Shown: positions 14,791-46,535, counted from the stretch's first letter. The stretch is 64,000 bases of DNA from Ostrea edulis (GCF_947568905.1 NC_079171.1:42780001-42844000); one strand, 5' to 3'. Numbers and translations are program-made. Notes: generated by a model from the letters alone, not told the origin.

Positions 14791-14870
<80 letters not shown>
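14610..14870. repeat. Three (TA)n tracts enclosing a 137-bp segment with 10-bp inverted ends (MITE-like)
   Basis: aagcactaaa at 14657-14666 / tttagtgctt at 14784-14793. Confidence 0.6.
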
Positions 14871-14874
<4 letters not shown>

Positions 14875-23346: not shown

Positions 23347-23515
23347 CCTTTCCCTTTTGTTCCTGTTCCACGTTCTGTAGAATGAGAATGGATGACAGTA
23401 TGACGATGATTATTAGCACAACAATTAGTGCTATAACATAATTCCTCCTATTTTTCTTTTTCTTTGCAGCTGTATCGGTATGGGAAAAAACATCTGATTT
23501 GCATTCTGTTTTCAG
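23347..23515 (-). CDS. Copy A transmembrane exon (LKTECKSDVFSHTDTAAKKKKNRRNYVIALIVVLIIIVILSSILILQNVEQEQKGK)
   Basis: ttccag acceptor (phase 0), G|gtatca donor (phase 1), 169 nt; joins the terminal exon in frame (G+AG = Glu). Confidence 0.85.
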
Positions 23516-26101: not shown

Positions 26102-26167
26102 ATCTGAATAGATTTGATCGTTCATTACAGTCAATGGAATCTGTAAATTGCCCTGGCAGGTTGTTGT
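26102..26167 (-). CDS. Copy A tail exon b (TTTCQGNLQIPLTVMNDQIYSD)
   Basis: ctattctgcag acceptor, gtaagt donor, 66 nt, phase 0-0. Confidence 0.75.
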
Positions 26168-26393
26168 CTGCAGAATAGAATTATGAAGTATTACGATAAA
26201 AGGACAAGAACAACGTAGCTTGTACTGTATTCACATCCCGGGAGGCGTAATTTCTGATCTCAGAGGGTAACAATGTGATATCGAAATGTTTTCAGAGCAA
26301 TTAGATTTGACTAAATTACATGCAAGTATAATGAAAATAAATAAATAAAAGAAATTCCTTCTGTCACAAAAAGTTATTGAATAGAACATTTAC

Positions 26394-26456
26394 ACCCGAG
26401 TAGATTTGATCTCTCATTACAGTCAATGACACATGTGCATTACCCTCCATTTTTAT
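26394..26456 (-). CDS. Copy A tail exon a (IKMEGNAHVSLTVMRDQIYSG)
   Basis: tttcattcggcag acceptor, gtaaat donor, 63 nt. Confidence 0.68.
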
Positions 26457-28675
26457 CTGCCGAATGAAAGTATTAAGCAAAGATGTTTTTTTAATTTGTC
26501 TTTTTCAAAGTATCGTCCTACAAATATCACATCAAGTTACCATATAGAAGAATACGTTTATGCAAGAATTAAAAATACATTCTCAATGCAAGATAAACAT
26601 AACTGCTATTTTCGCTTATCTACTTAAAAATAAACCGGTGATAAATCGAGTTATCATATAGAAGATGAAATATTATTTTTCAAATAATATGCTTGATGTG
26701 ATCATTGTTAACACTTGGCTAATTTGTCTAGTCATGACTACATGGTGTACAAACATGTATCATGTTATGTAGCCTGTGTTATGTGATCATCTTGTTTAGT
26801 TTCTTGATCACAAGTGAAGGACATGTATCTATTTTACACGTTATGTCTTCTTCTTGTCGTTGGCCTCTACACTTGGATCATCAGTGATCATAAACAATAA
26901 TTTTAGCTGATTCGGAGATATATTTTTATCCACCCTCATCAGCACCCAATGAAATAATGATTAAGTGTCACGTGATCATGTATTTAGTTGTAGCTGTCCA
27001 AGTGAAAGGAAGTATTAATGTTTATGTGATTATAGAGGGAAATTTCCCCTCCACCACCCCAATCTTAACACTTTAATTGAAATGTAATGTGTGCCACGTC
27101 ATCTTACTGTATATCAGTTTTTTACGGATTGCTTTGTACCTGTTACTATAATTGTGTTGTGTGGCAATTTTTTTTTAGGTGCCAATTCATTTTTCTATTT
27201 TATCATGTTTGTCTTTTTCGAGATTTATAAAAATTAGGGAGATCCCTATGTCATTCTTGTCTAGGTTGTCTGAGTTGTAGTTTTGATACTCGGGTATCTC
27301 CCTATCATAAGGGTTGTAAATAAGTTGTCAACTTCTTCAATCGGCCTTAATAAATGACAATTTTCAACCAACAATATGTATTCCATCGTTAATTGCCAAG
27401 AAAAATAACAAAGCTTCGGGACATGGGAAAACCATTTTCTTTGAATAGTATTTCATATTCTTATGAAAATGGGGAGCTTAAATAAGTTTATGTAAAGAAT
27501 TAAAAAGACATTATCAATGCAAGATAAATATAACTGCTATTTTTGCTTATCTACTCAAAAATAAACTGGTGATAAACCTAGTCAAACGTCCAAATGTAAT
27601 TGCTATGAGATAAACAGCACAACTTAGATTTGATTTCTATTGACTTTATCTGATAAGTTGAAATATTACAATTACAAAGCTTGTCTGGGAGGTTCAACTA
27701 GTTGATTAAAGCAAATATAAAATTACCCTATACAGATTTCTTTATATATTCACTTCTAAACATAGTGTACCGATTGTGAAATAGGTTTTGTGCGGATTAT
27801 TATTCACAGTTGATATAACTGTTGAACATCGCCTGTACATTATTTGTTTTATGTAGAAAATTATTTTAGCCATGCTTTATTTTCCATATTGATAATGTAG
27901 CATTGAATGTCTCTGAGATATAAATGTCATACTAAAGGTAAAACAAATCTGAAAGATATATGCATATACAGAATAAAATAACATTTAACCCTCCAATATG
28001 ACAGTGTTAAAAAACCGTACACGTCTAAACATTTCATGCATAAAAAGGGAAAAGTCATCAATCTAGAAATACCAGAGGTTGGATCAGGTACCTAGGTGGA
28101 TAATGCATTATCTGCTGGTCCACTATCTATATCAGGCAAACGGAGTAAAGCGTAGTACAAATCGGTGTGAAAACAATAGTCTAACAATTGTTATGAAACA
28201 TAACAAAAGGGATTCGACCTAGTGATAGCTTGTATTCGCAAATAACATAATTATAACGCCCATAAAATTTGCGAACTGCTGACTTTACAGGAGACTTTTG
28301 AAACCCATGAAACATCAACTTATTTGTCAGTAGTCTAGATTTCAAAAAAATGATTATATGTAGATTATACTCTCGTGTACCTAATCAGTTGAAAGACACA
28401 AATACCATACATGCGTAATGATGGGGCGTAGACAATATTCATCTTATTCAAAATGTAAAAATATATGTACGAAAATTCAATATGATTTTAAACTAGAGAA
28501 CAAGACCTTTTCAAGATGTTTGAAAATTTGTCAAAAATGATGACATAACAGTCAAAACCTCACAGTCAAAACTGAACACTATGCAGGTTGTTGCTATTTC
28601 TTCATCACGCTCGCGATTGTGAATATTAGTAAATGAACAATGATTAATGTGATAGATCCTTTAAACAATACCAAA

Positions 28676-28995
28676 TCAAGGGCAAATGCGGACCCCAATC
28701 ATACCAGAGTTGATATCAGGTGCGGAGGAGGAGAAAATATCTCCTTTTGACAAACAACACCAGATGTGAGCCATGTACCTTGATCAGATAATTGGAAAAT
28801 TCCGTACTCAAAATCAATGTGTAAAGAACGGCCAACCAACTGGTATGAACAATTTCAGACAACATTTGACCCAATGGCAGTGGGTATTTTCAAATTAAAT
28901 TATTAGAACGACCGTAGAATTTGCGGTATTCTGACTTTAAACTAGATCGTTGAAACCCATACATCATCAATTTATTTGTCAGTAGCCTGCCTCGA
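28676..28995 (-). mobile_element. Older Penelope-like 3' fragment
   Basis: Diverged match to 33204-33530; ortholog at about 43925-44245. Confidence 0.5.
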
Positions 28996-29214
28996 ATTTA
29001 AAATTTATCCTTTGCAAAACATGTTTCCAGGTATTGAACCAATTGATATCATATGAAACAATATGCATATAAAAATTGAATATTGTTACACAAATACGGA
29101 AAGGTAACGATGGAGAAACTGAAGTAATATCGCTTGCCAAAAAAGTTGTGTTGTTCGTCTTCCGTAAACATCTGTCCTCAATAAACTATCAAACATGAAG
29201 CAGACGTAAAAAAA

Positions 29215-29562
29215 AAATTGATTGTTTTTTTTTTGTTTTTGTTTTTTACGTCCCATCGATAATTCTTCATTCATACTGAGACGTCACCAGCCGTAAGTGA
29301 AATAACACAAAGTTAGACATATGCTTAACGTTTAGGGTCGTAGCAGTAAGGGTGCTTTATCGTGTCAACGCCTGTCGCAACACGATACCTCCGTTCTCAA
29401 AGTCATATCCGAAATACACTTCTCACTGCCGAACGTTTGGTGAAGGAGCAATTACTATCTATTTTAACGTGTTAAGTTTGAGTCGGTGATGACACGAACG
29501 GGGCTCGAACTCATCACCTCTCAGTTGAGCAGTGAACGCTCTACCACTGAGCTACCGCGATC
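29215..29562 (-). mobile_element. tRNA-derived SINE
   Basis: Head gatcgcggtagctcagtggtagagc...gagttcgagccc (A/B boxes); same position as the 13940-14287 SINE. Confidence 0.78.
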
Positions 29563-29770
29563 AAATTTAGAAAACCGTGTAATGTACTTTGTATCCAGTT
29601 CACTGGGATATATCCATTCAACATATGAAAAAAGTGAACGTTTATGTTTATAAAGTTTTAATTGACAATACTAGTAAAATGTAAGCATTTTGATCATCAG
29701 ACTTTTTATTGTCACACACTGTGATATATACTTGTATATTAGAATAAAATCTTGGAAGTAGAACACTTAC

Positions 29771-29836
29771 CTCTGAGGAGATGTAATCATTCACTACAAG
29801 CAATGGTTTACGTGTATTGTTCTTGGAAGTTGCCAT
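29771..29836 (-). CDS. Copy A exon c1 (MATSKNNTRKPLLVVNDYISSE)
   Basis: ttttgtag|ATG acceptor, GAG|gtaagt donor, 66 nt. Confidence 0.68.
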
Positions 29837-31242
29837 CTACAAAATATCAGTATTACGAGTACTCATGAGCAGAAAATTATTTGGGAGTTATATATTTTAA
29901 ATGTATATGCAAGATGACTAATGCAAATAAAATTATCAAAAATGTCATAAGTTGTTCATTTGAATCTATCTTCCTCATTTTCATATTTTAAATACGGTAT
30001 GATACATCATCCATACATCCTTTTAGAATTTCGTTTAGAAACAGTTACAATTTTTCGAATCCAATAATCAGATGAAAAAATCCATTAAGAGAAACTAAGG
30101 TTGTATGAAATCTTACAAAGGAGTAGCGTAACTTAAACACAAAGACAATACTTTACAAACCAATGAAGATCAATACCACATGACTGACATCAAGTGTAAT
30201 CATAAAAATTCTGAAAAACTTTGCAAGTTTAAGATTTTAGCCCGCTGTACATTTCACAACAGTCACAAATATCTGTACAATATATCTCTCCACTTGTAAT
30301 AAAACTTTAAGTAATAAAAAAACATCCATATGAAAATATTGCATACAATTCTTTGGAACTTATATATATTAAATTCATATGCAAGATGCCTAATGCAAAT
30401 AACATTATCAAAAATGTCATAAGTTGTTAATACTACTCTATCTTTATCATATTTTAAATACGGTATTATATATCATCCATATATCATTTCAGAATCCCAT
30501 GTAGAAACAATTACAATTTTTCGAATCCAACAACATGATGAGAACATCCATTAACAGAACATAATCTTGTATGAAATCGTACAAAGGAGTAACGTAACTT
30601 AAATTTTAAAGCAGTATTTCATAAATCAAAGATTTCATACCACGTGACTGACATAAAGTGTAATCATCAAAATTCGGAAAATGTTTGCAATTTTAGGGTT
30701 TTAACCCTTGGTACATCTCACAACAGTCACAGATACAAGTAAAATATATTTCTTGATTTGTAATGAAATCGTAACCGGTAGAAAGACATGCATATGAAAA
30801 TATTGCTTAAATGCAATGTAATGTTCCCTTATGAGAATATGCATCATAAAGAAGACTAACATCGATGTATTTACCACATATATTTCTTAGAAAACTCCAA
30901 ATAAACAGATCAAATTATGAATATATTATACACAACATAGATTTCCCAGCGTATCCGATTTGTAAAAGTCGTTTATGGCGCGATGAAGACCACCAATTAT
31001 ACTGCATTTTGAAATTTCACTTCGGGGAAGTTTGATTAGTATTCCGGAAAAAATAATTCTCTTCACCTTTATCTACAGTAAGGGAAATACAAACTCTGAA
31101 GCGTAGTACTTCACCACTTGCACGGACCGGTACGAAACGATACTAGTAAAACGTAAGCATTTTGATCATCAGACTTTTTATTGTCACACACTGTGAGATA
31201 TAATTGTATATTAGGATAAATTGTCTGAAGGAGAACACTTAC

Positions 31243-31308
31243 CTCTGAGGGGATGTAATCATTCAGTACAAGCAATGGTTTACGTGCATTGTTCTTGGGA
31301 GTTGCCAT
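31243..31308 (-). CDS. Copy A exon c2, a tandem duplicate (MATPKNNARKPLLVLNDYIPSE)
   Basis: ttttatag|ATG acceptor, GAG|gtaagt donor; part of a roughly 1.47-kb local duplication. Confidence 0.6.
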
Positions 31309-33203
31309 CTATAAAATATCAGTATTACGAGTACTTATGAGCGGAAAATTCTTTGGAAGTTATAGATGTTAAATTCATATGCAAGATGCCTAATGCAAAT
31401 AAAATTATCAAAATGTCACGCATTGTTAATATGACTCTATCATTTTCATATTTTAAATACGGTATCATATATCATTTCAGAGTTTCATATAGAAATAGTT
31501 ACAATTTTTGAGTCCAATAAATAGATTAGAACATGCATTATTAAAAACTAAGCTTGTATGAAATCTTGCAAAGGAGTAGCAGAGCTTAAACTTTAAATCG
31601 GTACTTTACAAATCAATGAAGATTAATACTTTATGACTGACATAATTTGTAGTCATTAAAATTCGGAAATTCTTCGCAATGCTAGGATTTCAACCCTGTG
31701 TACATCTCACATCAGTCACAAATATAAGTGCAAAATAACTATATATTTATAATGAGACCTTCACCGATAGAAAGACATGGATATGAAGGTATTGCTTAAA
31801 TGTAATGCAATGTTACCTTAGGAGAATACTGCATCATAAAGAAGACTAACGTCGATGTATTTACCACATATATTTCTTAGATAACTAAAAATAAACAGAT
31901 CAAATTATGAATATATTATACACAACATGAATTTTTCAAAGTATCCAATTTGTAAAAGCCGTTTAAGGCACAATGAAGACCGCCAATAATACTGTATTTT
32001 CATTAGTATTCAGGAAAAATAATGCGCTTGGCCTTTATCTGCGATAGGGGAAATATAGACCCTGAAGCGTAGTACTGCACCACTTACACGGACCGGTAAG
32101 AAACGATTTTTGCAGATAATAGTTTGCTCGATACGGTGAACGGTTTGCATGGAATGGTGAACGGTTTACACGGAACCCTTCGCATGAGATGCTATCCATT
32201 TTGTAGGTGTGGCCTGCACGCTTTGTGAACGGTATGCAGGAAACAACAGGCATGGCCTGCATGCTTTGATTTTCCGGCATCATATGTTCTTCCTAGGGTT
32301 AGTTTAAACAAGACCTTATATCAATGTAATGGTAATTCTAGATATTAAAAAAGACTGAGAAAGAAATTATTATGATCCATATTAAAATGTTTGCTCATTT
32401 AGATGGCAGTATTTTTTTTTACTTATCAGCTCATTGACCACACTGAGATAAAACAGATGAATCTTCGAAAATGAAAGAAAAAGATGCAAAAATGTATCGT
32501 CATGTCATATTGACTATTCAACCTTTATTGATCCGTTGGTCTGTTAAATTTGGATGGTTCAAATCTAGGTTTTGTTTCCTTTACTACCCTACTTTTTCAT
32601 GGACTTTTTTGACCACTTTTACTTCCAGTAAAGATTCACATTGTATTTTATCGCATTATTGCACTTGTTTTTGTTTTTGTAACAATATTGAGAACGATGT
32701 TGTGTAATACAATTATACATTGCATTTCTAGTCAATACATGTATGCGTTTTTATCTCCCTGTGAATTTCATTCTGTATTTTTAGGACCCAGATTTTTCGT
32801 CATTTTATATAAATGACAAACTTTTACACCTAACATGTCTTTCTGTTACGATTCTACATTGGAGGAAAATGTATTCATTTCTGAGCGAAAAAGCTTATAC
32901 ACTCCCCTTTGTCATATTTCAATTATCCCCTCCAATTTCCACACCGTCTGTACAAATATCAAATTCAAATACCCGGATTAGCTGACCTTTATTAAGAAAA
33001 AAAGAACCATAAAATTTGCGTATATATAAGTATTTTATTAAGTTATACACAGGTTGGTTTTTGCATTATACAGAAAGTTCCGATAAACAATTTTGTATGG
33101 AAATATATTAATTTGAAAGAAAAATTAACTTGAAGTAAGTGCAACAAGACAAATTATTCCTATATACAAAAATAATAATAAAAACTAACCAAGCAGATAA
33201 ATA

Positions 33204-33530
33204 GATAGTTGGGCAAACACGGACCCCTGGACACACCAGAGGTGGGATCAAGTGCCTAGGAGGAGTAAGCATCCCCTGTTGACCGGTCACACCCGTCGTG
33301 AACCCCATATCCTGATCAGGTAAACGGAGTTATCCGCAGTCAAATCAGTTTGCCAAGAACGGCTTAACTATCGGTATGAAACACGTCAGACAGCATTTGA
33401 CCCAATGCGAGGTTGTATTGACGAACTAGATCGTTATAACGACCATAGAATTTGCGAAATGCTGACTTCAATCGAGACTGTTGAAATCCCTGTACCATCA
33501 ACTTGTTTGTCAGTAGCTCACCTCGATTTA
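33204..33530 (-). mobile_element. Penelope-like 3' fragment (young)
   Basis: Encodes LLTNKLMVQGFQQSRLKSAFRKFYGRYNDLVRQYNLALGQMLSDVFH plus a 3' UTR; absent in unit B. Confidence 0.7.
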
Positions 33531-33589
33531 ATTACATCAGAGACCATGTGGACTTTTGAAGAGGGAGTGGAAAGAATTTACTAGTAGAA

Positions 33590-33770
33590 AGTTAGAGATG
33601 CCATAAAATTAGAAAGATATATATCAAGTTCATTAGACATTTGGGCGAGGGTTTATTGACTAAATCACATGATTTTCTCAGTAATTTAAGATGATTGACT
33701 ATTTTCATCATTGCTTTCTTATTTTCATTAGCTTCGTTTAAAAGCCGAAATCTCGAGGATGTTGAACATC
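33590..33770 (-). mobile_element. Crypton-like (tyrosine recombinase/DUF3504-type) N-terminal relic
   Basis: SRFRLL...ENKKAMMKIVNHLKLL resembles the SRF...NKNT..KT...LKLF start of Crypton-derived proteins; better-preserved paralog at 50590-50790. Confidence 0.4.
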
Positions 33771-33871
33771 TTGTTGTCATGATTAAGAAGACGAATTCAA
33801 TATTCATCCGCATAACTATGTCACGTGATATGGAAGATACATATGTATTAATATCTTTCATACATTTCTTT

Positions 33872-33977
33872 CACAAACAAGTTGATGGTACAGGGATTTC
33901 AACAGTCTCGATTGAAGTCAGCATTTCGCAAATTCTATGGCCATTATAATGATCTAGTTCGTCAATACAACCTTGCA
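33872..33977 (+). mobile_element. About 100-bp Penelope-like fragment, inverted relative to 33204-33530
   Basis: Near-perfect reverse complement of about 33408-33510. Confidence 0.7.
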
Positions 33978-34369
33978 TATGTATATTGCATACACTAATC
34001 CACGGTTTCCAAGGACAACATGGACTTCAATATTGTAAACCCGCAAAGGGCAACCTCATCTGATGTATCAGTGCCTACATCAAACATTGAGAGAGAACCT
34101 ATTGAGACACCGTCACCGAGCACATATCTCATTCCAATTAGATCATGAGTTATTGAACACAATATCATCCTTTATCTCACAACTGTTAATTTCCAAAGAA
34201 CATGAGCCAGTAGACACAAATTTTATTGATAGAAACAAAATAACGTCTTTCTGTTACCGAATCTGACCCCCCCCCCCAAGAAGCTTAATTAAAGTAGCAC
34301 GCCATCACTCCCAGTAAGTATGTGACAGAATAAAGTAATCTTAGTAAAGGGGACATAATGCAGAATATG

Positions 34370-34960
34370 AGTGATCATTCCCATTCCAAACTCAGAGTTA
34401 TCAATTCCAGTATAACAAGACGTACTAAATAGGAAATACAATGGCTACAGCGCAGACTTAGGGTCTGATTTCGTAAATGGGATAAAGAGTTTCCTTCGGT
34501 TGCAATCCAACTCCTATCTCTGCCATAACAAACAACCATAGTTCAGCCTTAAAACATAAAACATGTAACATTTAAAGGATTCCAAACAATAATGATATTG
34601 CTTGTTGTTTTCTATGCCCATCCTTTGCACCTTCTATATCATCCCTTTTACGCTTTGCTCCAGAGTCTGCGCCAGGAAAATTCAGAATAATCCATGATCT
34701 CTCTTATCCGAATGATTTTTCTGTCAATACCCAGACAAAACCCAAATAGTGTATTATTGCACAACTGATTATTCAACTAATTCAGGACTATGGCGATTTA
34801 TACTTAATAATAAAAAGAAAAAAGAACCCGGATATATAGGATACATTTAAAACGTTCCTGTTAACCCATCTGACTATCATATCTAAGTTTTTTTTAAAAT
34901 GTTGAATTGGTTTGATGTTAAGTTTATATTACTGATTATCAGATGGCGTCCTCCTTAGGC
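34370..34960 (+). mobile_element. DIRS/Ngaro-like retrotransposon RT relic
   Basis: GKFRIIHDLSYPNDFSVN; IQLIQDYG; PVNPSDYH. Confidence 0.65.
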
Positions 34961-36744
34961 TCGTGAAAGAGTGCGAACTTATGCGGGTTGTATCAATACC
35001 GTAAAGGAAGAAGTATTTGTTTAAAAACATAATTTGTTGTTCGAAAAAGATAGTATTTACCAATAATATCGTATTATGTAATACACCTAACTCAGAATTT
35101 TATTTGTTCTGTAAGCCTAATATAGATTTCACATCCCCTTAACAACGACTAATGAATGCGTAATAATGAAAACCGCTAATCATATGTAAATCGCTATTTA
35201 TTGAAATGGCAATATACAAGCAATACAACCAAAGAGGAGATCCTATCAAGCACGTTTCTCTTAGAAAAGGTGTACAAAAATAACCCCCAGTGTTACAATA
35301 CAATCCATGTTAGACATAGCACTTTCAAGTCAAGAAGTTTATATGGTGTGGTATACATGCAGAAAAAATGGCATTCAAAATAAAAAAAACAAAACAACAA
35401 CACAGAAAGCAAAAGGAAAAAGAAATCGCTTGTAAACAATAAACCACTGATGTGAGAATGATATAGTTACATTTCATAATATATTTGCCAAAACTCTTTT
35501 AACAACAATTCATAGAATATTTACCAAAACACTGTTGTGACTACCAAAACACCTTAAACTACAATTCATAAGATATTTACAAAAACATTTTAATTACAAT
35601 TCATAAAACGTTAACAAAAACATTTTAATTACAATTCATAAAACGTTTACAAAAACAATTTTAACTACAATTCATAAAATATTGATAAAAACACTTTTAT
35701 TACGATACTATATTTACATTTCATAGAATATTTACCAAAACAATGTCATGCCAATGATATATCCATATTTCGAAAATTATTTACAAATAACACTGATATC
35801 TTCATTTCATAAAATATTGATCAAAACAATGTTATGACAATGCTATGCTTACATTTCATAAAGTATTTACCAAAAAACAATGTTATGACAATGCTATGCT
35901 TAGATTTCATAAATTATTTACCAAAACAATGTTATGACGATGCTATGCTACATTTCATAAAGTATTTTCCAAATCAATTTCATGTCAATGATTTTTCCAT
36001 ATTTCGAAAATTATTGACAAATAACACTGATATCTACATTTGATAGCATATTATGACACTGCTATATCTATATTTCAAAAAAAAAAGAAAGATTCCTATA
36101 GGGTCTCTTATACACCCTGGGTATCAACAGATTCTATATTCAAAGGTATATCTTTACCCGGCTGACCGCGAATAGATATCTAATAGCATGCGATTTCTGA
36201 TTAAGAAATAATTCATATCAATCAACAAAGAAAACTCATCTTACATTTTGATTAACAAAGTGAAGATAGATAAGTGCCCGTAAAACCTACCTCATTGTGT
36301 TTGAAGAGGTGTAACTTCTAAAGTAGGCTATGCTATGAGGAGCTGTAATCAAGTGATTAATGTTTTTACCGATATTATTGATAGTTTCAAATTGTTCACG
36401 TGGAAACAAAGTTTATTCATAACAATATATTTAGCAATTGGAATTCTGTGTGATATTACAATTGTATTACAAATAGATGATCGTTTCTCCTGTGTACATT
36501 TCACATGGTGCTCTACCGTCGCATTTGATATCAGCAACAGTGTATCATATACAATATTATCAATTTTATTCAGGTAAAAAGAAAAGGAAAACTAATAAAG
36601 TATGTATTGAAATATTTAATGGACTGTATGTGGCATGGCAAAGGCAGTACATAGAGATGTTTTTTTCCGTATACAATATATTTATATATGAGATTTTCAT
36701 GGTTTAATCAACAAGTTGAAAAAAAATCAATATGGATGTGGTGA

Positions 36745-38054
36745 TCATGGGACGCATGTGTCCGGTAGCACGACATTTCCTGCAAATCCATGACCGTCGT
36801 TCTTTCTATGACCATATACCAGTAAGCCAAAGACTGCGTTGTTCGTTGTCTTGACGTTAATAGTGCCATCCGACACATGTACCCCCAAAACAATGTACCG
36901 AACTTTTCCTACTGTCACGGGAGTATGAAATGTCCTTATATACTCAGTTAAGCCTCGTTTGTTTAAGTTAAGGTGAGGTAACGAACTTTCTTCAATTATT
37001 AAAACAATATAATTACTTGTAAAATTGCTAGGAGTGATAACTGTATATTTGTTAAGGTACTGCGTGACACCGGGTATGGTTATCATATAAGGATCGCCTG
37101 ACGTGTCTGATCCAGTGGCAAAACTGGTTAAAAGAACGGGTCGTTCTGATTCAATAACAGCAACTTCGTTTTCAGTGATAGAGAATTCAAAGTATCCTTG
37201 TGGAACTAAAGACACTCTTGTTTTCTTATTGCCAACACGATATGTCACCCTGCTTTTAAAAGGCGACACAACTTTCAGAATTGTTCCGTACCTGTTTATG
37301 TTTGGCGGGGCAATATACGTATTATCCAATCTATCAACAGGTGGGATTTGTTCAACAAGTTGACTGCAGGCTCCAGAATTATTTCTGTTTTTGAAAGCTA
37401 TTTTTTGACAACTATTTCCTGAAAACACAGCAATATTAGACGAAGCTTTTATGAATGTTCCAGATAAATCAGCATTATGCCTGATCTGATACGTCTCAAG
37501 CTCATTCAAAGCAATAACCATTTCACTGCCATCCTGATACTCAACCCCATCAACAGAAAGTGTTAAATTGTGTTCAATACGGAATATAATTCTAACTTCT
37601 GTAGAGTTATTTAAGGCGGCTATTGCAAACTGAACCCTATGGTATTTTCTATTGAAATACTCAACACTTGATATTATATAGGTGTCGGATAGGTGTTTCA
37701 CTGGCAAAACCATGGTGCTGTCAGAAGATAATTTGTAATTATCAATAATAATGACGGCAGCGTCAAGTGTGGTTTCTATAAGTATAGCCTTTTTTTCTGC
37801 CTTAAAATACGACAGCATCATCGTATACGGAACATTCATCTTTTTGACCTTCGCCATCTTTGTGTTAACTTCGATGTAAGTGGAAGTGGAGTCTAAGTCT
37901 TTCTTAAAAATGTTCAGCTCAAAATCTCTCTCCGCCACAATGTAGACCGACTTGTCTGTTTTTGGAGCATTGTCATGATTACTAGAGAAACAAATCAGGT
38001 ATCTCCGGTGGATATTTTCTGCCAAAAATACAGAATCTAGAATTTCATATTGCA
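36745..38054 (-). CDS. Copy B terminal exon: FCGBP-N (IgGFc-binding) domain; frame open but splice acceptor altered
   Basis: 449-aa ORF, paralog of A and C; the homologous acceptor reads cagag|TG instead of cctag|AG. Confidence 0.85.
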
Positions 38055-39435
38055 CTCTGTATACAACATCATTGATATTAAAAATGTGGTACATTGTTTA
38101 TAGTACAAATGATATTGAGACGTTTTTTGCGTTGCTCTATTAAAATAAAACCCATGTTAGCATTGTATGGTACAAATAGACCATTGCTCTTTTGGTTTGA
38201 CTTACCACTAGTGTCTCGTGATTTGATGTCAATAGTACTGAAAGGCTTGTTAGGGCAAACCAACTGTCTTTGATTTGTTTGTGCTGATAAATATATAATA
38301 TATAAATAAGTTGATAACAAAATAAATAAGTCAATAAACAGAAAAATGCAAAGAATAAAAACTGTTTAAAAGCATTCTTTCTCTCGCAACTTCAGTTTAT
38401 TGATAAAATGTTGCAAAATCCTTTTAGATCCGTGTTTACCAATCATTAATGTTATCAGTTAATAAATACATTTAACATCATATCTTATACATGCTTTGAT
38501 CAAATGTTGTACGTTATGAGTGATCACTAATAACCGAGTTGTGGACTGTATCTGCTTTTTCGTTCGTCAGTATGTGATCTTTAGACACAACGTTTGCACA
38601 AGTGTGTTTGATACCATTATGAAGGACATTAGTTCCATGTATTTTATATAGTAATACAGATACATATTTTGAATGCTGCATTGAAGCTACAATTTATCCT
38701 CTTTTGAATTGCAAAAACTAAATGTATGCATTTACCACCATTGAACTTGAGATAACCCGCTTTCTGAGGTTTAAAAGTGTATAAATGCTATCCGTAATAA
38801 GTGTGGCATAATTTTCGGATAAGCAGTTAAGTGGCAAAATTTTCTCACTTTTGCTTTTATAACTGTTGAGGCACTATTTACCTGTCACATTATGAATCGT
38901 TGTACACTACGCATTCATTCACTGTTAACTTTCATTATAAGGTAACCAATAAACATATAAACTTCACTCGAAGTTTACCAAAAGACTTATGAATTGGTAA
39001 TGGATAAAAAGGGATTTTTTAAAAAAAAAATTTTGTTCAACTGTAAAGAATAAAGAGAGTACATATGTACACTATTCTGCCTAAATAATTATGGAACATG
39101 TTTCGTGTATTTTTGGGGTAAGTGTACTCTGCAAATGGATAATATTACGACAAAATTACTTCTAACATTTGCTGTTTATGGTTAGGGTTTTCTATTTTGA
39201 TGTTTCATTGAAAGGAATATAACATAAGTAGGTAAAGGAAATTCAGTAAATCATACACAATACGTGTTTATAAACATATTTCACATTTGTTGAAGTTTAA
39301 TAATTGGATATTTATTTTGGAATTTCCAATAAGTAAAATGAGATTGTAATGAAAATATTACAGATGAAGTTTTGGGAAAGATACATCGTTGTGTGTGTAG
39401 TATAGATATAATGCTTTACATGCAAATTGTGATAC

Positions 39436-39607
39436 CCCTTTCTCTGTGTTCCTGTTCCACGTTCTGTAGAATGAGAATGGATGACAGTATGCCGATGATG
39501 ATTATTAGCACAACAATTAGTGCTATGACATAATTCCTCCTATTTTTCTGTTTCTTTGCAGCTGTGTCGGTATAGGAGAAAACATCTGATTTGCATTCTG
39601 TTTTCGG
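39436..39607 (-). CDS. Copy B transmembrane exon (PKTECKSDVFSYTDTAAKKQKNRRNYVIALIVVLIIIIGILSSILIL...)
   Basis: ttgcag acceptor, G|gtatca donor, 172 nt (3n+1). Confidence 0.85.
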
Positions 39608-40836
39608 CTGCAATAGAAATATCACCGAGTTAAGATAACAGTGTATAGGATATAAATAACCTGGGTATATGGGATGGTTTCAAGTCGAGTCCTGTCAACT
39701 ACGTGCAAGGGTAGCAATAATTCATTGTGTGGATTTATTTTAAAATGAAGGCAAAGGTCATTGAAGAAATGTAGTTTAATGAAGAAAAAATTGGGAAATA
39801 TGTTTCTGAAATAAATAGACCTCTCAGTATTATATCCTGTTTCGGAGTCTTTTCTAACTTTTGCGAGGGATTTCGAAATCAATCATTTAACTTTAAGAAG
39901 CCATTTTCTCTTGATTCTGTAGCTGCAAGCATGAAAACGTAATGCTGGAGATGTATCAGCGCTTGTTTGTGACGTTAGGTTTCCTTGATGGATGTATTTG
40001 AATCTTGTTTTATCTCCATTCGAAAATCTTTCCCTGATACAGAAACGTCACCAAAGCACAACACTCTTGTTAATTGCAAAGGGAGATTCTTTATCAAATC
40101 AAACCTTAACGTGATTCGGAATGTGAAAGAATGAAGATGAAAAAGTGATCAATTTCATAATTCTTATAAAGAACATCAAATTAAGAAATTACGAATAACG
40201 CAAACGCAGACTCCTAGAAAACGAGAATATATATACCCTGAAAGGTAGCAGAAAATGCTTTGGTGAAATAAGTAACTCATTTAGAATTATAGAAAAATTC
40301 AGCATCTGTTCAAATTCATAAACTTTGCAAGTTAATAATTATACAGGTAAATGAATGTAAAAGTAAATTATTGTACAGTTAAATAATTGTACAGATAGAT
40401 AATAATACAGTTTACAGGTAAATAATTGTACAGCAAAACAATTGTACAGATAAGTAATTGTACAATTAAATAGTCGTACATGTAAAACTTTCACAGAGAG
40501 GTGTTTGGATAACAATAACAGACAATATCTACAGGGATTCTTTAGATCTTGAGGAGGCCCAGTATACCTGAGTTTTGATAGCATTGACCTATCCACAACT
40601 GCTATTTTCTGGTAATTCAACTGTTTTTAAAAAGACCCCGGAACAATGCAAATTCAATATAATTGTAATTGTTTCCCCTCTATATACATGTACATGTATT
40701 ATGAATTACACTATCAGAAATCAAAAAATAATTAACACAATAATATCTAAAACTTGTAACTTATTGAAATAATTTATGTCATCAATTTATTATACCTCTA
40801 TATTTATAACATAAATTAATAATTGAGTCAATAATG

Positions 40837-40839
<3 letters not shown>

Positions 40840-40901
<62 letters not shown>
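40840..40901. repeat. (GA)n microsatellite
   Basis: Direct observation. Confidence 0.98.
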
Positions 40902-40909
<8 letters not shown>

Positions 40910-41818
40910 GACAGAGATACAGAGAGAGACGCTGTGTGGAGAATGTGTGTCAGCTACCCATATGAATACAACCATTATCCATACACTATGACCACAGACA
41001 TTCTGGAGAGGTCCCTGAGACAGATCCTGTGTATCTCAAAACTATATAAATAAAAAGCACAGACAGGTAGATTTCTATCATGTTCTGTCTCTGTGTATTT
41101 CTTTGAGTATCATGGTATAAAGCAATTAACACCTTGGTAGACCCTGGTCACTCCAGGTAAATAACATCTGTTTAGATTAGACTCCGCCTACATTTTCACT
41201 GACCGTACGGTCATGAGATGGGTCTTTAAATACGTTTTCTCAGATGGCCTGAATACTACTGATTTATTATTATCTATTTTGAATGCAATATCTCCTAATG
41301 CAGGTCCACCAGATTTCTAAAGATTTTCGCTTTTCTTCTTCCATGTAAAAAAAAATCATCAAACAATATACCGAGATACTTATAAAATTATGAATATTCA
41401 GGGTGACCTTTTATTTTGAATACATTATCACTTTTTTGCTGGTTTTTTTTTTTCGAAAGTTTTGGTTGAGTTGATGCATATTCTCCAGACTTTACAATAT
41501 GGAATATTGTGTCCATGTCGGCCTCATTAATTTGTGTGGCAAGGAGGGGGTGTAGTTTGATCAAGGCATCAGTTCACCGTTCATTCAACTGTTACAGTTA
41601 CATATAATGATAACAGTATATTACGATAAAAGGACAAGACCATCGTTGCTAGTACTGTATTCACATCCCAGAATGTGTAGTGTCTGTTATCAGAGGGCAA
41701 GAATGTGATATTGTTTCCAGAACAATTATATTTGACTAAATTACACGCAAGTATAATCAAAATACATTAATAAAAGAAATTCCTTCTGTCACAAAAAGTT
41801 ATTGAATAGAACATTTAC

Positions 41819-41881
41819 ATCCGAGTAGATTTGATCTCTCATTACAGTCAATGATATATGTGCATTGTCCTCCATAGTTAT
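41819..41881 (-). CDS. Copy B tail exon a (ITMEDNAHISLTVMRDQIYSD)
   Basis: ttttattcggcag acceptor, gtaaat donor, 63 nt. Confidence 0.68.
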
Positions 41882-44454
41882 CTGCCGAATAAAAGTATTA
41901 AGTGAAATTGTTTTTTAATTTGTCTTTTTCAAAGTATCGTCCCACTAATATCACATCAAATTACCGTATAGAATAATACGTTTATGTAAAGAATTAAAAA
42001 GGCATTCTGAATGCAAGATAAACATAACTGCTATTTTCGCTTATCTACTTAAAAATAAACCGGAGATAAATCAAGTTATCATATAGAAGATGAAATATTA
42101 TTTTTCAAATAATATGTTTTATGTGATCATTTTTAACACTTGGAGAATTTGTCTGGTCATGACTATATGAGTTACATACATGTATCATCTTATGTAGTCT
42201 GTGTTATGTAATCATCTTGTTTAGTTTCTTGATCACAAGTGAAGGACATGTATCTATTTTACACGTCATGTCATCGGTAATCATAAACAATGATTTTAGC
42301 TGATTGGGAGATATATTTTTATCCCTCTCATCAGCAGCCAATGAAATAATGATTAAGTGTCATGTGATCCTGTATTTATTTGTAGCTGTCCAAGTCAAAG
42401 AAAGCATTAATGTTTATGTGATTATAGAAGAAAATTTGCCCCCCACCACCCCAATCTTACCACCTTAATTCAAATGTAATATGTGCCATTTCACCTTACT
42501 GTTTATGAGTTTTTACGGATTGATTTGTACCTGCTACTATATTTGTGTTGTGTGGCAAATTTATTAGGTGCTAATTCATTTTTCTATTTTATCATGTTTG
42601 TCTTTATCGAGATTTATGAAAATTAGGGAGATCACAATGTCATTCTTGTTTAAGCTGTCTGAGTTGTAGTTTTGATACCCGTGCATCTCCCTATTATAGG
42701 GGTTGTAAATAAGTTGTCAACTTCTTCAATTGTTATTTATAAATGACAAGTTTCAACCAACAATATGTATTCCATTGTTAATTGCCAAAAAAATAACAAA
42801 GCTTTGGGACATGAAAAAAATCAGTTCCTTCGAATAGTATTTTATATTCTTATAAAAATGGAGAGTATAGCTAAGTTTATGTAAAGAATTAAAAAGGTAT
42901 CCTCAATGCAAGAGAAATATATCTGCTATTTTCGCTTATCTACTTAAAAATAAACTGGTGATAAACCAAGTTGAAAGTTCAAATGTAATTGCTATGCGAT
43001 AAACAGCACATCTTAGATTTGATTTTCTATGTATTTTATCTGACAAGTTGAAATATTACAATTACCAAGCTTGTTTGAGATGTTCAATTAGTTGATTAAG
43101 CAACTATAAATTTATCCTATAACGATTTCTTTATATACTCACTTCTAAATATAGTGTACCAATTGTGAAATAGGTTTTGTGCGGATTATTATTCACAGTT
43201 GATATAACTGTTGAACATCGACTGCAGATTATCTGTTTTATGTAGAAAATTCTTTTAGCCATCCTTTATTTTGTCATATTGATAATATAGCATTGAATTT
43301 CTCTGGGTCTAAAGGTAAAAGAGATCTCAATGATATATGCATATACAGAACAAAATCACGTTTAACCCTCCAAAATGACACTGTTAAAAACCGCACACGT
43401 CTAAACTTTTCATGCCTAAGAAGGAAAAAGTCATCAATCTAGAAATACCAGAATTTGGATTAAGTACCTAGGTGGATAATGCATTATCTGCTAGCCCTCT
43501 ATCTATATCAGGCAAACGGAGTAAACCGTAGAACAAATCGATGTGAAAACAATAGTATAACAATTGTTATGAAACATAACAAAAGGGATTCGACCTAGTG
43601 ATAGCTTGTATTCGCAAATAACATAATTATAACACCCGTTGAAAGACACAAATACCATACATGAGTAATGATGGGGCGTTGACAATATTCATCTTATTCA
43701 AAATGTAAAAATATATGCACGAAAATTCAAAATGATTTTAAACGAGAGAACAAGACCTTTTCAAGATGTTTGAAAATTTGTCAAAAATGATAATATAACA
43801 GTCAAAACCTAACAGTCAAAACTTAACACTGTGCAGGTTGTTGCTATTTCTTCATCACGCTCGCGATTGTGAATATTAGTAAATGAACAATGATTAATGT
43901 GGTAGATCCTTTAAACAATACCAAATCAATGGCAAATGCGGACCCCAATCATACCAGAGTTGAGATCAGGTGCGGAGGAGGAGAAAATATCTCCTTTTGA
44001 CAAACAACTCCAGATGTGAGCCATGTACCTTGATCAGATAATCGGAAAAATCCGTACTAAAAGTCAATGTGTAAAGAACGGCTAACCAACTGGTATGAAC
44101 AATTTCAGACAACATTTGACCCAATGGCAGTGGGTATTTTCAAATTAAATTATTAGAACGACTGTAGAATTTGCGGTATTCTGACTTTAAACTAGACCGT
44201 TGAAACCCCTACAGCATCAATTGATTTGTCAGTAGCCTGCCTCGGATTAAAATTTATCCTTTGCAGAACATGTTTCCAGGTATTGAATGAATTAATATCA
44301 TATCAAACAATATGCATATAAAAATTAAATATTGTTACACAAATACGGAAAGGTAACGATGGAGAAACTGAAGTAATATCGTTTGCCAAAAAAGTTGTGT
44401 TGTTTTCCGTGAACATCTGTCTTCATTAAACTATCAAACATGAAGCAGACGAAA

Positions 44455-44800
44455 AAAAAAAGTGATTGGTGTTTTTTTTTTTTTTACGCCCCATCGATAA
44501 TTCTTCACTCATACTGAGACGTCACCGGCCGTAAGTGAAATAACACAAAGTTAGACATATGCTTAACGTTTAGGGTCGTAGCAGTAAGGGTGCTTTATCG
44601 TGTCAACGCCTGTCGCAACACGATACCTCCGTTCTCAAAGTCATATCCGAAATACACTTCTCACTGCCGAACGTTTGGTGAAGGAGCAATTACTACCTAT
44701 TTTAACGTGTTAGGTTTGAGTCGGTGATGACACGAACGGGGCTCGAACTCATCACCTCTCAGTTGAGCAGTGAACGCTCTACCACTGAGCTACCGCGATC
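44455..44800 (-). mobile_element. tRNA-derived SINE (ortholog of 29215-29562)
   Basis: A/B boxes and near identity to the unit-A SINE. Confidence 0.78.
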
Positions 44801-45008
44801 AAATTTAGAAAACCATGTAATGTCCTTTATACCCAGTTCACTGGGATATATCCATTCAACATATGAAAAAAGTGAACGTTTATGTTTATAAAGTTTTAAT
44901 TGACAATACTAGTAAAACGTAAGCATTTTGATCATCAGACTTTTTATTGTCAGACACTGTGATATATACTTGTATATTAGAATAAAATCTTGGAAGTATA
45001 ACACTTAC

Positions 45009-45074
45009 CTCTGAGGAGATGTAATCATTCACTACAAGCAATGGTTTACGTGTATTGTTCTTGGAAGTTGCCAT
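45009..45074 (-). CDS. Copy B exon c1 (MATSKNNTRKPLLVVNDYISSE)
   Basis: Same peptide as A c1; ag|ATG and gtaagt intact. Confidence 0.68.
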
Positions 45075-46469
45075 CTACAAAATATCAGTATTACGAGTAC
45101 TCATGAGCAGAAAATTCTTTGGGAGTTATATATGTTAGATGTATATGCAAGATGACTAATGCAAATAAAATTATCAAAAATGTCATAAGTTGTTCATTTG
45201 ACTCTATCTTCCTCATTTTCATATTTTAAATACGGTATGATACATCATCCATATATCCTTTTAGAATTTCGTTTAGAAACAGTTACAATTTTTCGAATCC
45301 AATAATCAGATGAGAAAATCCATTAACAGAAACTAAGGTTGTATGAAATCTTACAAAAGAGTAGCGTAACTTAAACACAAAAACAATACTTTACAAACCA
45401 ATGAAGATCAATACCACATGACTGACATCAAGTGTAATCATAAAAATCCTGAAAAACTTTGCAAGTTTAGGATTTTAGCCCGCTGTACATTTCACAACAG
45501 TCACAAATATCTGTACAATATATCTCTCCACTTGTAATTAAACTTTAAGTAATAAAAAAACATCCATATGAAAATATTGCATACAATTCTTTGGAACTTA
45601 TATATATTAAATTCATATGCAAGATGCCTAATGCAAATAACATTATCAAAAATGTCATAAGTTGTTAATACTACTCTATCTTTATCATATTTTAAATACG
45701 GTATTATATATCATTTCAGAATCCCATGTAGAAACAATTACAATTTTTCGAATCCAACAACATGATGAGAACATCCATTAACAGAACATATGCTTGTATG
45801 AAATCGTACAAAGGAGTAACGTAACTTAATTTTTAAAGCAGTATATCACAAATCAAAGATTTCATACCACGTGACTGACATAAAGTGTAATCATCAAAAT
45901 TCGGAAAATGTTTGCAATTTTAGGGTTTTAACCCTTGGTACATCTCACAACAGTCACAGATACAAGTAAAATATATTTCTTGATTTGCAATGGAATCTTA
46001 ACCGGTAGAAAGACATGCATATGAAAATATTGCTTGAATGTAATGTAATGTTCCCTTATGAGAATATGCATCATAAAGAAGACTAACGTCGATATATTTA
46101 CCACATATATTTCTTAGATAACTCCAAATAAACAGATCAAATTATGAATGTAGTATACACAAGATGGATGTCACAACGTATCCAATTTGTAAAAGCCGTT
46201 TAAGGCACGATGAAGACCATGAATTATACTGCAGTTTGAAATTTCACTATGGGGAAGTTTGATTAGTATTCGGAAAAAATAATTATCTTGACCTTTATCT
46301 ACGATAAGGGAAATATAGACCCTGAAGCGTATTACTTCACCACTTGCACGGACCGGTACGAAACGATACTAGTAAAACGTAAGCATTTTGATCATCAGAC
46401 TTTTTTATTGTCACACACTGTCATATATAATTGTATATTAGAATAAATTGTTTGAAGGAGAACACTTAT

Positions 46470-46535
46470 CTCTGAGGAGATGTAATTATTCACTACAAGC
46501 AATGGTTTACGTATATCGTTCTTGGAAGTTGCCAT
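46470..46535 (-). pseudogene. Copy B exon c2 with a destroyed donor (GAG|ataagt)
   Basis: MATSKNDIRKPLLVVNNYISSE is open, but the GT donor has become AT (46469). Confidence 0.6.

What the first reader, a model, noticed from the sequence alone, without database searches (positions are those of the whole stretch)
26102..46535. Paralogs differ in tyrosine-motif number (C-type 3, A 1, B 0), as in paired receptor families
A: exon c has ISSE in place of IYTE, the a-b junction reads YSG|T, and only YSD|L remains (skipping b would give YSG|L). B: exon b is deleted and the TM exon starts with CCG (Pro) instead of CTG (Leu), giving YSD|P, so no YxxI/L. Closely related ectodomains attached to signalling-rich, reduced and null tails is the pattern of signalling versus decoy receptors, though simple decay is an alternative explanation.
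Basis: partly seen in the sequence, partly recalled or inferred. Interest (0 to 1): 0.7.

Follow-up and report, generated by a model that had tools for sequence, protein, structure and literature searches.

The report
Oyster receptor paralogs with unequal tyrosine tails
Three neighbouring flat-oyster genes for a membrane protein do differ in the number of tyrosine motifs in their inner tails (3, 1, 0), but the one-motif copy carries a premature stop and nothing beyond ordinary gene-family drift is needed to explain the pattern.

Summary
The window is Ostrea edulis chromosome OX387711.1. It holds a minus-strand tandem array of type II membrane proteins: cytoplasmic tail mini-exons, then a transmembrane (TM) exon, a 78-nt exon and a large IgGFc_binding (PF17517) exon.

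- **C-type:** reads IYTE|I, IYSE|I and IYSD|L.
- **A:** reads ISSE|I, IYSG|T and IYSD|L.
- **B:** has ISSE, a clean ~95-bp deletion of exon b, and a TM exon starting CCG (IYSD|P).

1. A has an in-frame TAA (20898-20896) that removes the last 81 ectodomain residues. The TAA is also in the second repeat copy and in DNA-read contigs.
2. RefSeq models skip exon a. B is modelled as c1→TM. A is apparently modelled as c1→b→TM.
3. The C body in the window has a one-base frameshift in an A-run, whereas its sister copy C′ is intact.
4. The motifs fit neither ITIM nor ITAM, and no TM segment carries a charged residue.

Tail exons are no more conserved than their intron flanks, although the I-Y core is kept. 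No RNA runs were available.

Verdict: an ordinary birth-and-death gene family. B, which is intact and motif-less, leaves a weak decoy-like reading open.

The parts
29771..29836 (-). Gene A, first coding mini-exon c1 (MATSKNNTRKPLLVVNDYISSE). Codon 20 is TCC (Ser) at 29779-29777, where the C-type has TAC (Tyr).
   Evidence: splice sites tag|ATG and GAG|gtaagt
31243..31308 (-). Gene A, duplicate first exon c2 (ends DYIPSE), part of a 1.46-kb tandem duplication. Splice sites are intact.
26394..26456 (-). Gene A, mini-exon a (IKMEGNAHVSLTVMRDQIYSG). The last codon is GGT.
26102..26167 (-). Gene A, mini-exon b (TTTCQGNLQIPLTVMNDQIYSD). The first codon ACA (Thr) destroys the a|b motif. Together with the TM exon, exon b gives YSD|L.
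   Evidence: identical in the contigs of three DNA runs; the Ile and Tyr codons differ synonymously from C-type exon b
23347..23515 (-). Gene A, transmembrane exon. It starts CTG (Leu), and the TM segment has no charged residue.
22114..22191 (-). Gene A, 78-nt stalk exon d
20653..21926 (-). Gene A, IgGFc_binding ectodomain exon. An in-frame TAA at 20898-20896 (GAA in B and C) removes the last 81 residues. The rest of the frame is open.
   Evidence: read contigs span the TAA with no differences; the sister copy A' (XP_056002174.1) ends at the same residue
45009..45074 (-). Gene B, mini-exon c1, identical to A's c1 (ISSE). It is the first coding exon of RefSeq XP_056002152.1 and XP_056002153.1.
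46470..46535 (-). Gene B, duplicate exon c2 (ends NYISSE). The donor is mutated from gt to at.
41819..41881 (-). Gene B, mini-exon a (ITMEDNAHISLTVMRDQIYSD). Splice sites are intact, but the RefSeq model skips it.
41610..41619 (-). Gene B, site of the ~95-nt deletion that removed exon b together with its splice sites
39436..39607 (-). Gene B, transmembrane exon. It starts CCG (Pro). Two further B-specific changes (H12Y, K20Q) lie in the juxtamembrane part.
36745..38283 (-). Gene B, exon d (38283-38206) and an intact IgGFc_binding ectodomain exon (38018-36745)
11977..15327 (-). C-type (copy C') tail: exons c 15327-15262, a 12330-12268 and b 12042-11977, giving IYTE|I, IYSE|I and IYSD|L. Its TM exon and body lie left of the window and are intact.
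55838..58622 (-). C-type body inside the window: TM exon 58622-58447, exon d 57370-57293 and ectodomain exon 57111-55838. The A-run at 58572-58560 has 13 A, against 12 in C', which shifts the frame.

Best explanation
This is a young tandem array in the flat oyster, evolving by gene birth and death. Its genes encode type II single-pass membrane proteins with an extracellular IgGFc_binding (PF17517) beta-sandwich domain.

The cytoplasmic N-terminal tail is built from duplicated phase-0 mini-exons of 63-66 nt. Each ends in [ND][DE]-x-I-Y-[ST]-[DE], and the hydrophobic +3 residue of each YxxI/L motif is the first codon of the next exon. Motif number therefore changes with very small events.

Four events account for the 3/1/0 series:
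1. TAC>TCC in exon c, which predates the c1/c2 duplication and is shared by A and B.
2. ATA>ACA at the first codon of A's exon b.
3. A ~95-bp deletion of exon b in B.
4. CTG>CCG at the first codon of B's TM exon.

These are best read as drift of a weakly constrained tail in the A/B lineage, not as an organised signalling/decoy set. A has recently become a pseudogene through a nonsense codon in the ectodomain. B is an intact gene with a short, motif-less tail. The C-type (copy C') keeps three Src/SH2-type or sorting-type YxxI/L sites.

The sequence changes, the stop codon, the gene models and the substitution rates are shown. The use of exons a and b in mRNA and any role of the tyrosines are inferred.
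For: - **Identity and structure.** Exons and motifs are verified. PF17517 matches have E 1e-44 to 1e-49. The window maps to OX387711.1, and the RefSeq products are named 'IgGFc-binding protein-like'.
- **A is broken.** It reads TAA where B and C read GAA. Contigs of runs X1 and X2 run through the codon without a difference or a branch. The sister copy A' (P0024) ends at the same residue. RefSeq splits A into 104-aa and 289-aa products.
- **The break is recent.** Lineage-specific nonsynonymous/synonymous counts are A 44/30, B 51/38 and C' 37/26. Body dN/dS is 0.38-0.47.
- **Tails drift.**
  - Exon a, A against B, is 56/63 identical, against about 91% in the flanks.
  - Exon a, A against C', is 46/63 identical, against 84-90% in the flanks.
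  - Exon b, A against C', is 56/66 identical, against 89% in the flank.
  - Tail dN/dS is about 0.7-2.3 on very few sites.
  - B has three B-specific replacements in the 26 juxtamembrane residues.
- **The variation is family-wide.** Annotated Saccostrea homologs have N-terminal tails with 3, 2, 1, 1, 0 and 0 Yxx[ILV] motifs.
- **Mosaic similarity** points to unequal crossing-over or gene conversion in the array.
Against: - B is fully intact in both repeat copies. Its ectodomain is as constrained as that of the C-type. A motif-less receptor may therefore be maintained by selection.
- The D-Q-I-Y-S core of exon a is invariant in all three paralogs, while 15-17 differences fall elsewhere in that exon.
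- The Ile and Tyr codons of exon b differ only synonymously between C' and A (ATA TAC against ATC TAT). This indicates protein-level constraint on the tyrosine core, at least in the past.
- Three of B's changes all hit motif positions, which could be seen as directed.
- No RNA data could be examined, so expression and exon usage remain open.
- Runs X1-X3 come from one study and may be the individual that was assembled. Fixation of the TAA in the species is therefore not shown.
Confidence: 0.55

Rival explanations
1. Functional split. The C-type is a signalling (or endocytic) receptor, and B is a maintained non-signalling, decoy-like partner that binds the same ligand through its 84%-identical ectodomain. 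A was an intermediate that has recently been lost.
For: - B is intact and identical in both repeat copies, and it has a RefSeq model.
- B's ectodomain is under the same constraint as that of C'.
- Three separate changes remove every possible YxxI/L from B whatever the splicing pattern.
- Motif-rich and motif-less paralogs also sit on one chromosome in Saccostrea echinata (P0008 and P0015).
- Phosphotyrosine signalling through ITAM and ITIM receptors exists in oysters (PMC6994640, PMC11841013).
Against: - The defining features of paired receptors are not met: there is no ITIM or ITAM consensus and no charged TM residue.
- The tails show no purifying selection beyond the I-Y core.
- At the observed tail divergence, neutral loss of the motifs is expected.
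- There are no expression, ligand or phosphorylation data.
Confidence: 0.22
2. Mini-exons a and b are little used or not used in mature mRNA. The real tails are then mostly c->TM, so the true counts are C-type 1 (YTE|L), A 0 and B 0, and the 3/1/0 series is largely a modelling construct.
For: - The RefSeq model of B joins c1 directly to the TM exon and skips the intact exon a.
- Exons a and b are not more conserved than their flanking introns.
- No protein in the 5.8-billion-sequence database shares B's N-terminus.
Against: - All ten mini-exon copies keep an open phase-0 frame, and nine keep AG/GT splice sites.
- The Ile and Tyr codons of exon b differ only synonymously between C' and A, and the DQIYS core of exon a is invariant.
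- The 104-aa gene annotated over 29836-22938 can be rebuilt from the known exons with canonical splice sites only as c1+b+TM+14 nt, which includes exon b.
Confidence: 0.15
3. The lesions that set the copies apart are assembly artefacts, so the copies do not really differ in status. This would cover the stop in A, the frameshift in C and the near-identical 58.65-kb repeat.
For: - The C frameshift is a single extra A in a run of 12-13 A, and the sister copy C' is in frame.
- The two 58,654-bp repeat units are 99.9-100% identical. That could be a haplotype assembled twice.
Against: - The TAA in A is a substitution, not a homopolymer length.
- The TAA lies inside read-derived contigs of two runs with no branch at that site.
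- The TAA is present in both repeat copies, and those copies differ elsewhere (P0007 against P0024).
- The tail differences are substitutions and a 95-bp deletion, all identical in B and B'.
Confidence: 0.05

Closest known systems
Type II paired receptors of the NK gene complex (Ly49, CD94/NKG2, DCIR/DCAR)
   Same: - The genes are clustered.
- The proteins are type II single-pass membrane proteins.
- The ectodomains are more than 80% identical.
- The N-terminal cytoplasmic tails either carry or lack tyrosine motifs.
- Relics of lost motifs remain in the motif-less member, as with the ITIM relic in KIR2DS2 (PMC3533184).
   Different: - The ectodomain is PF17517 beta-sandwich, not C-type lectin-like or Ig.
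- The motifs are I-Y-[ST]-[DE]-[IL] with N, Q or H two residues before the Tyr, so they are not ITIMs.
- The motifs are too far apart to form an ITAM.
- The motif-poor copies have no Lys or Arg in the TM segment for an adaptor.
- One of the three members is a pseudogene.
Oyster tyrosine-motif immune receptors (CgNCAM1 with two ITIMs binding SHIP2; the BCR-like CgIgR with an ITAM)
   Same: They are bivalve membrane receptors whose cytoplasmic tyrosine motifs have been shown to signal in haemocytes. This shows that the downstream machinery exists in oysters (PMC11841013, PMC6994640).
   Different: - Those are type I Ig-superfamily proteins with canonical ITIM or ITAM motifs.
- The present genes are type II and have non-canonical motifs.
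- No function has been tested for the present genes.
IgGFc-binding protein (FCGBP)-like proteins of molluscs (Pfam PF17517)
   Same: All three paralogs have a full-length PF17517 match. The closest relatives are 'IgGFc-binding protein-like' proteins of Ostrea and Saccostrea (49-57% identity), followed by Crassostrea and Mytilus.
   Different: - FCGBP proper is a large secreted mucin-like protein with VWD/TIL repeats.
- These genes are about 530-570-aa membrane-anchored proteins carrying only the N-terminal-type domain behind a TM helix and a tyrosine-motif tail.
- I found no paper on this membrane-anchored form.
YxxPhi endocytic sorting signals of type II receptors (transferrin receptor, asialoglycoprotein receptor)
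   Same: The tails are N-terminal and cytoplasmic, and they carry Tyr-x-x-hydrophobic motifs at some distance from the membrane.
   Different: - Three repeated copies are present, each with a conserved acidic/Ile context (-D-x-I-Y-S-[DE]-[IL]).
- An Ile just before the Tyr and acidic neighbours are more typical of Src-family kinase sites (my own knowledge, not tested here).

Membership tests
Paired activating/inhibitory immune receptors (definition: PMC3533184) | Clustered genes with highly conserved extracellular domains | tested here: met
   Tandem array with 16-19-kb spacing. Ectodomain identity is 82-84%.
Paired activating/inhibitory immune receptors (definition: PMC3533184) | The inhibitory member carries an ITIM, [S/I/V/L]-x-Y-x-x-[I/V/L], in its tail | tested here: not met
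   The C-type motifs are ENIYTEI, DQIYSEI and DHIYSDL. The residues two before the Tyr are N, Q and H.
Paired activating/inhibitory immune receptors (definition: PMC3533184) | The activating member has a short tail and a positively charged residue in the TM segment, for an ITAM adaptor | tested here: not met
   The TM segments of A and B (YVIALIVVLIII(I)(G/V)ILSSILIL) contain no K, R, D or E. The same holds for the motif-less Saccostrea P0015.
Paired activating/inhibitory immune receptors (definition: PMC3533184) | Overlapping expression and a shared ligand | not testable with these tools
   No RNA run was offered, and no ligand is known.
ITAM-bearing receptors | YxxL/I - 6 to 12 residues - YxxL/I | tested here: not met
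   The tyrosines are at residues 20, 41 and 63 of the conceptual C' tail, with 17-18 residues between one motif and the next Tyr. The distant Mytilus homolog P0022 does have YEEI-x8-YDDL.
Decoy (non-signalling) receptor | An intact ligand-binding domain combined with loss of the signalling part | tested here: inconclusive
   B has an intact ectodomain and no YxxI/L under any splicing pattern. A is truncated by a TAA. Whether the C-type motifs signal at all is unknown.
IgGFc_binding domain proteins (Pfam PF17517) | Match above the gathering score over the whole profile | tested here: met
   B scores 166.8 bits over profile positions 1-297 and C scores 162.2 bits. A scores 153.1 bits but covers only profile positions 1-239 because of the stop.
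Type II single-pass membrane protein | No signal peptide, one hydrophobic helix, positive charges on the N-terminal side, and a glycosylatable Cys-containing C-terminal domain | tested here: met
   KKKKNRRNY precedes a 21-23-residue hydrophobic segment. The AlphaFold2 model has residues 1-43 disordered, a helix at 45-82 and an all-beta domain at 110-520. This is prediction only.
Pseudogene (gene A) | A disabling mutation confirmed independently of the assembly | tested here: met
   The TAA at 20898-20896 lies inside read contigs of X1 and X2 and is present in copy A'. The X1-X3 samples may be the individual that was assembled.
Pseudogene (gene A) | Relaxed constraint (raised nonsynonymous/synonymous ratio) on its lineage | tested here: not met
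   The A-lineage N/S ratio is 1.47, against 1.34 for B and 1.42 for C'. The inactivation is therefore recent.

The most novel reading that the evidence does not exclude
Bivalves have a lineage-specific family of type II receptors with a PF17517 ectodomain. Their tyrosine docking sites are split across the junctions of duplicable phase-0 mini-exons, so exon gain, exon loss or exon skipping sets the number of sites. In Ostrea edulis a three-site member (C-type) and an intact site-less member (B) would act as a signalling/non-signalling pair on one ligand. That would be a paired-receptor logic that arose independently of the vertebrate ITIM/adaptor system.
Probability: 0.15. Interest if true: 0.6.

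Novelty: new member of a known kind. Interest (0 to 1): 0.3.

Why it matters
**If the functional reading were true.** It would show that the pairing of similar ectodomains with motif-rich and motif-less tails, known from vertebrate NK and myeloid receptors, also evolved in a mollusc on an unrelated protein scaffold. It would also point to candidate immune or adhesion receptors in a farmed species that suffers from Bonamia and other diseases.

**As the evidence stands.** The value is mostly in annotation:
- The locus is fragmented in RefSeq. The C' tail exons are missing, A is split into two products, and C starts inside a shifted exon.
- One copy is a recent pseudogene.
- The region contains a 58.65-kb near-identical repeat that should be checked for assembly duplication.

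The split-motif mini-exon design is a neat example of how small changes alter the number of motifs. It is not surprising to a specialist in multigene receptor families.

Tried and rejected
1. **RNA evidence.** The look-up of sequencing runs returned only three DNA-like runs from one study and no RNA run. Transcription and exon usage could therefore not be tested. I used the single read-laying run on gene A's DNA (20600-26500) instead, to check the stop codon and exon b.
2. **Relatives of the tail.** A word search with B's N-terminal 110 residues found only B itself. A search with the TM-exon ORF found one 88-aa product on a 1.6-kb genomic Logan contig (P0023, L007). That contig has no b-like exon in its 1.2 kb of upstream sequence.
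3. **Metagenome scans.** Two scans, one with the TM exon and one with a TM-exon alignment, found nothing.
4. **JGI contigs.** The contigs carrying 65-70% identical ectodomains (L004, L005) contain no recognisable TM or tail exons.
5. **Fold of the ectodomain.** There is no sequence match in the PDB. Foldseek gave only low-TM multi-Ig matches. VIA-align gave middling matches: Gram-positive pilin/adhesin domains at Z 7.5 for residues 99-214, and TM1070 at Z 10.1 for residues 333-425. I do not treat these as evidence of function.
6. **Literature.** I found no paper on membrane-anchored PF17517 proteins in bivalves, and none citing the XP accessions.
7. An exact look-up of my reconstruction of the 104-aa RefSeq product of gene A would have required typing a spliced protein that has no reference. 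The c1+b+TM+14-nt structure therefore remains an inference.
8. **Readings rejected.**
   - The tail exons are not chance ORFs, because the splice sites, the reading phase and the I-Y core are conserved.
   - The TAA is not an assembly error, because read contigs and the second copy carry it.


Full report
**What the locus is.** The window is AT-rich (about 32% G+C). It contains a tandem array with 16-19-kb spacing. Three long minus-strand ORFs (20896-21933, 36745-38094, 55838-57118) match Pfam PF17517 (IgGFc_binding) at E 1e-44 to 1e-49.

The closest proteins are RefSeq 'IgGFc-binding protein-like' products of Ostrea edulis. Next come Saccostrea (49-57% identity), Crassostrea and Mytilus. Exact look-ups place the window at OX387711.1 (GCA_947568905.1), positions 42,780,001-42,844,000.

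**Gene structure.** RefSeq protein XP_056002152.1 (P0002) was compared with the DNA. The structure on the minus strand is:
- one or more phase-0 tail mini-exons of 63-66 nt;
- a 169-176-nt exon that encodes a basic juxtamembrane stretch and the only hydrophobic segment;
- a 78-nt exon d;
- one ~1.27-kb exon that encodes the whole PF17517 domain.

These are type II membrane proteins. There is no signal peptide, KKKKNRRNY lies on the N-terminal side of the helix, and an AlphaFold2 model shows a disordered tail, a helix at 45-82 and an all-beta ectodomain (pLDDT mostly above 80). Fold searches gave only middling similarity to bacterial pilin/adhesin beta-sandwiches and a TM1070-like domain. There was no sequence match in the PDB.

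| Gene | exon c | exon a | exon b | TM exon starts |
|---|---|---|---|---|
| C-type | ...NENIYTE | IPTEDNIQLSSIVTSDQIYSE | ITTSQDNVQIPLPVMNDHIYSD | L |
| A | c1 ...NDYISSE | IKMEGNAHVSLTVMRDQIYSG | TTTCQGNLQIPLTVMNDQIYSD | L |
| B | c1 identical to A's | ITMEDNAHISLTVMRDQIYSD | deleted | P (CCG) |

- The C-type therefore has three YxxI/L motifs, each split across a junction.
- A keeps only YSD|L.
- In B, a clean ~95-nt deletion removes exon b with its splice sites.

- Exon c lies in a 1.46-kb tandem duplication (c1/c2) in both A and B. B's c2 has a dead donor site (gt to at).
- The finding's end coordinates are the last base of A's exon b (26102) and the ATG of B's c2 (46535).

1. *Gene A is broken.* Its ectodomain exon has TAA at 20898-20896 where B and C have GAA. 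This cuts off 81 residues and the last 58 positions of the Pfam profile. The rest of the frame is open.
   - The stop is not an assembly slip. Contigs built from the reads of runs X1 and X2 run through it without a difference or a branch.
   - The sister copy A' in the next repeat unit (XP_056002174.1) differs at one residue but ends at the same place.
   - RefSeq splits A into a 289-aa fragment and a 104-aa product spanning 29836-22938. Among combinations of the known exons, only c1+b+TM plus a 14-nt terminal exon gives 104 residues with a canonical acceptor. This is an inference.

2. *RefSeq's model of B joins c1 directly to the TM exon.* It skips the intact exon a. In the annotated isoforms the counts are therefore still A 1 and B 0, but exon a is used in neither.

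3. *The window holds slightly more than one unit of a 58,654-bp higher-order repeat.*
   - Positions 1-5348 equal 58653-64000 exactly.
   - B and B' are 99.95% identical, with identical exons.
   - C and C' are 99.9% identical.
   - The C-type tail in the window (11977-15327) belongs to C', whose body lies left of the window and is fully open.
   - The C body inside the window has 13 A where C' has 12 in the TM exon (58572-58560). This shifts the frame, and RefSeq starts that model (XP_056002155.1) at a Met in the shifted frame.

**Selection.** The results are summarised here; details follow.

| Region and comparison | Result |
|---|---|
| TM + exon d + ectodomain, pairwise dN/dS | 0.38-0.47 |
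| Lineage-specific nonsynonymous/synonymous changes | A 44/30, B 51/38, C' 37/26 |
| Exon a, A against B | 56/63 identical; flanks about 91% |
| Exon a, A against C' | 46/63 identical; flanks 84-90% |
| Exon b, A against C' | 56/66 identical; flank 89% |
| Exon c, A against B | identical, within a region that is 97% identical |

The three lineage-specific ratios for the body are alike, so A lost its function recently.

The tails look different from the body. Tail dN/dS is about 0.7-2.3 on very few sites. With 27-64% protein divergence in these exons, losing two or three two-residue motifs needs no selection.

Two observations do indicate constraint on the tyrosine core itself:
- The 16 nt encoding D-Q-I-Y-S are invariant in all three exon-a copies, while 15-17 differences fall elsewhere in that exon.
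- The Ile and Tyr codons of exon b differ only synonymously between C' and A (ATA TAC against ATC TAT).

Similarity along the unit is mosaic. The 3' part of A's ectodomain exon is 94% identical to C and 87% to B, whereas its exon-c region is 96-98% identical to B. This is as expected from unequal crossing-over or gene conversion in a tandem array.

**Comparison with known systems.** By the definition in PMC3533184, paired receptors have four features: conserved ectodomains in a gene cluster, an ITIM in the inhibitory member, a short tail in the activating member, and a charged TM residue in that member for an ITAM adaptor.
- Only the first feature is met.
- The motifs have N, Q or H at the position two before the Tyr, so they are not ITIMs.
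- They are 21-22 residues apart, so they do not form an ITAM.
- No TM segment has a charged residue.

Variation in motif number is general in this family. Annotated Saccostrea homologs have 3, 2, 1, 1, 0 and 0 Yxx[ILV] motifs in their N-terminal tails. A distant Mytilus homolog has YEEI-x8-YDDL. Tyrosine-motif signalling does exist in oysters (PMC6994640, PMC11841013), so a signalling role for the C-type tail is plausible but untested. A sorting role (YxxPhi) is equally open. I found no paper on membrane-anchored PF17517 proteins.

The most likely account (about 0.55) is ordinary birth-and-death evolution of a lineage-specific receptor-like family. In this account the tail is weakly constrained, four small mutations explain the series, and the intermediate member is a recent pseudogene.

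A maintained motif-less partner (B) next to a three-motif C-type remains possible (about 0.2). A third possibility is that exons a and b are rarely spliced in, so that the series is really 1/0/0 (about 0.15).

RNA evidence, which would decide this, was not available. Only three DNA-like runs from one study were offered. Those runs may also be from the individual that was assembled, so fixation of the stop codon in the species is not shown.

Noticed in passing
window 1-5348 and 58653-64000; loci L001, L002, L003: The array is itself part of a 58,654-bp higher-order tandem repeat whose units are 99.9-100% identical. B and B' encode the same protein, and C and C' differ by 2 substitutions and 1 indel in 3 kb. 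This is either a very recent segmental duplication or one haplotype assembled twice.
   Followed up: partly
window 58560-58572 (minus strand, TM exon of C): The run has 13 A, against 12 A in the sister copy C'. This shifts the frame of the C TM exon. RefSeq XP_056002155.1 accordingly starts at a Met in the shifted frame. It could be a homopolymer error or a real one-base indel.
   Followed up: partly
window 3404-4439 and its copy 62044-63079 (minus strand): A Tc1/mariner-type transposase ORF (Pfam HTH_Tnp_Tc3_2 and DDE_3) sits in the ~12-kb b->TM intron of the C-type gene. That intron is about 9.5 kb longer than the same intron in A and B.
   Followed up: partly
window 24737-25721: This stretch lies inside A's b->TM intron, next to the masked N stretch at 25182-25332. 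Its k-mer depth in the DNA runs is 10^3 to 10^6, against about 40-100 elsewhere, and there are many internal joints. It looks like a very abundant satellite or mobile repeat of the oyster genome.
   Followed up: no
window 29300-32300 and 44500-47300: A 1.46-kb tandem duplication containing the first coding exon (c1/c2) is shared by A and B. A's c2 is intact (ends DYIPSE). B's c2 has lost its donor site (gt to at). The exon is 94-95% identical between c1 and c2, while the upstream flank is 86% identical.
   Followed up: partly
window 19400-32600 compared with the B and C units: The relationships are mosaic. The 3' part of A's ectodomain exon is 94% identical to C but 87% to B, whereas its exon-c region is 96-98% identical to B. 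This points to gene conversion or unequal crossing-over between array members.
   Followed up: partly
window 22938-22951 (minus strand): A strong acceptor (tttttttctttacag) is followed by TTGAACAAGAATAA. This appears to serve as an alternative terminal exon in the 104-aa RefSeq product of gene A. B has the acceptor but no stop close behind it.
   Followed up: partly
proteins P0008, P0010, P0012, P0013, P0015, P0019, P0022: Annotated Saccostrea homologs have N-terminal tails with 3, 2, 1, 1, 0 and 0 Yxx[ILV] motifs. P0008 shows internal repeats in its tail. The Mytilus edulis homolog P0022 has YEEI-x8-YDDL, which is ITAM-like spacing.
   Followed up: partly
window 21600-21700 and 21300-21330 (A), with the matching parts of B and C: Lineage-specific amino-acid replacements in the ectodomain cluster in a few short patches (alignment codons about 95-105 and 201-211).
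   Followed up: no
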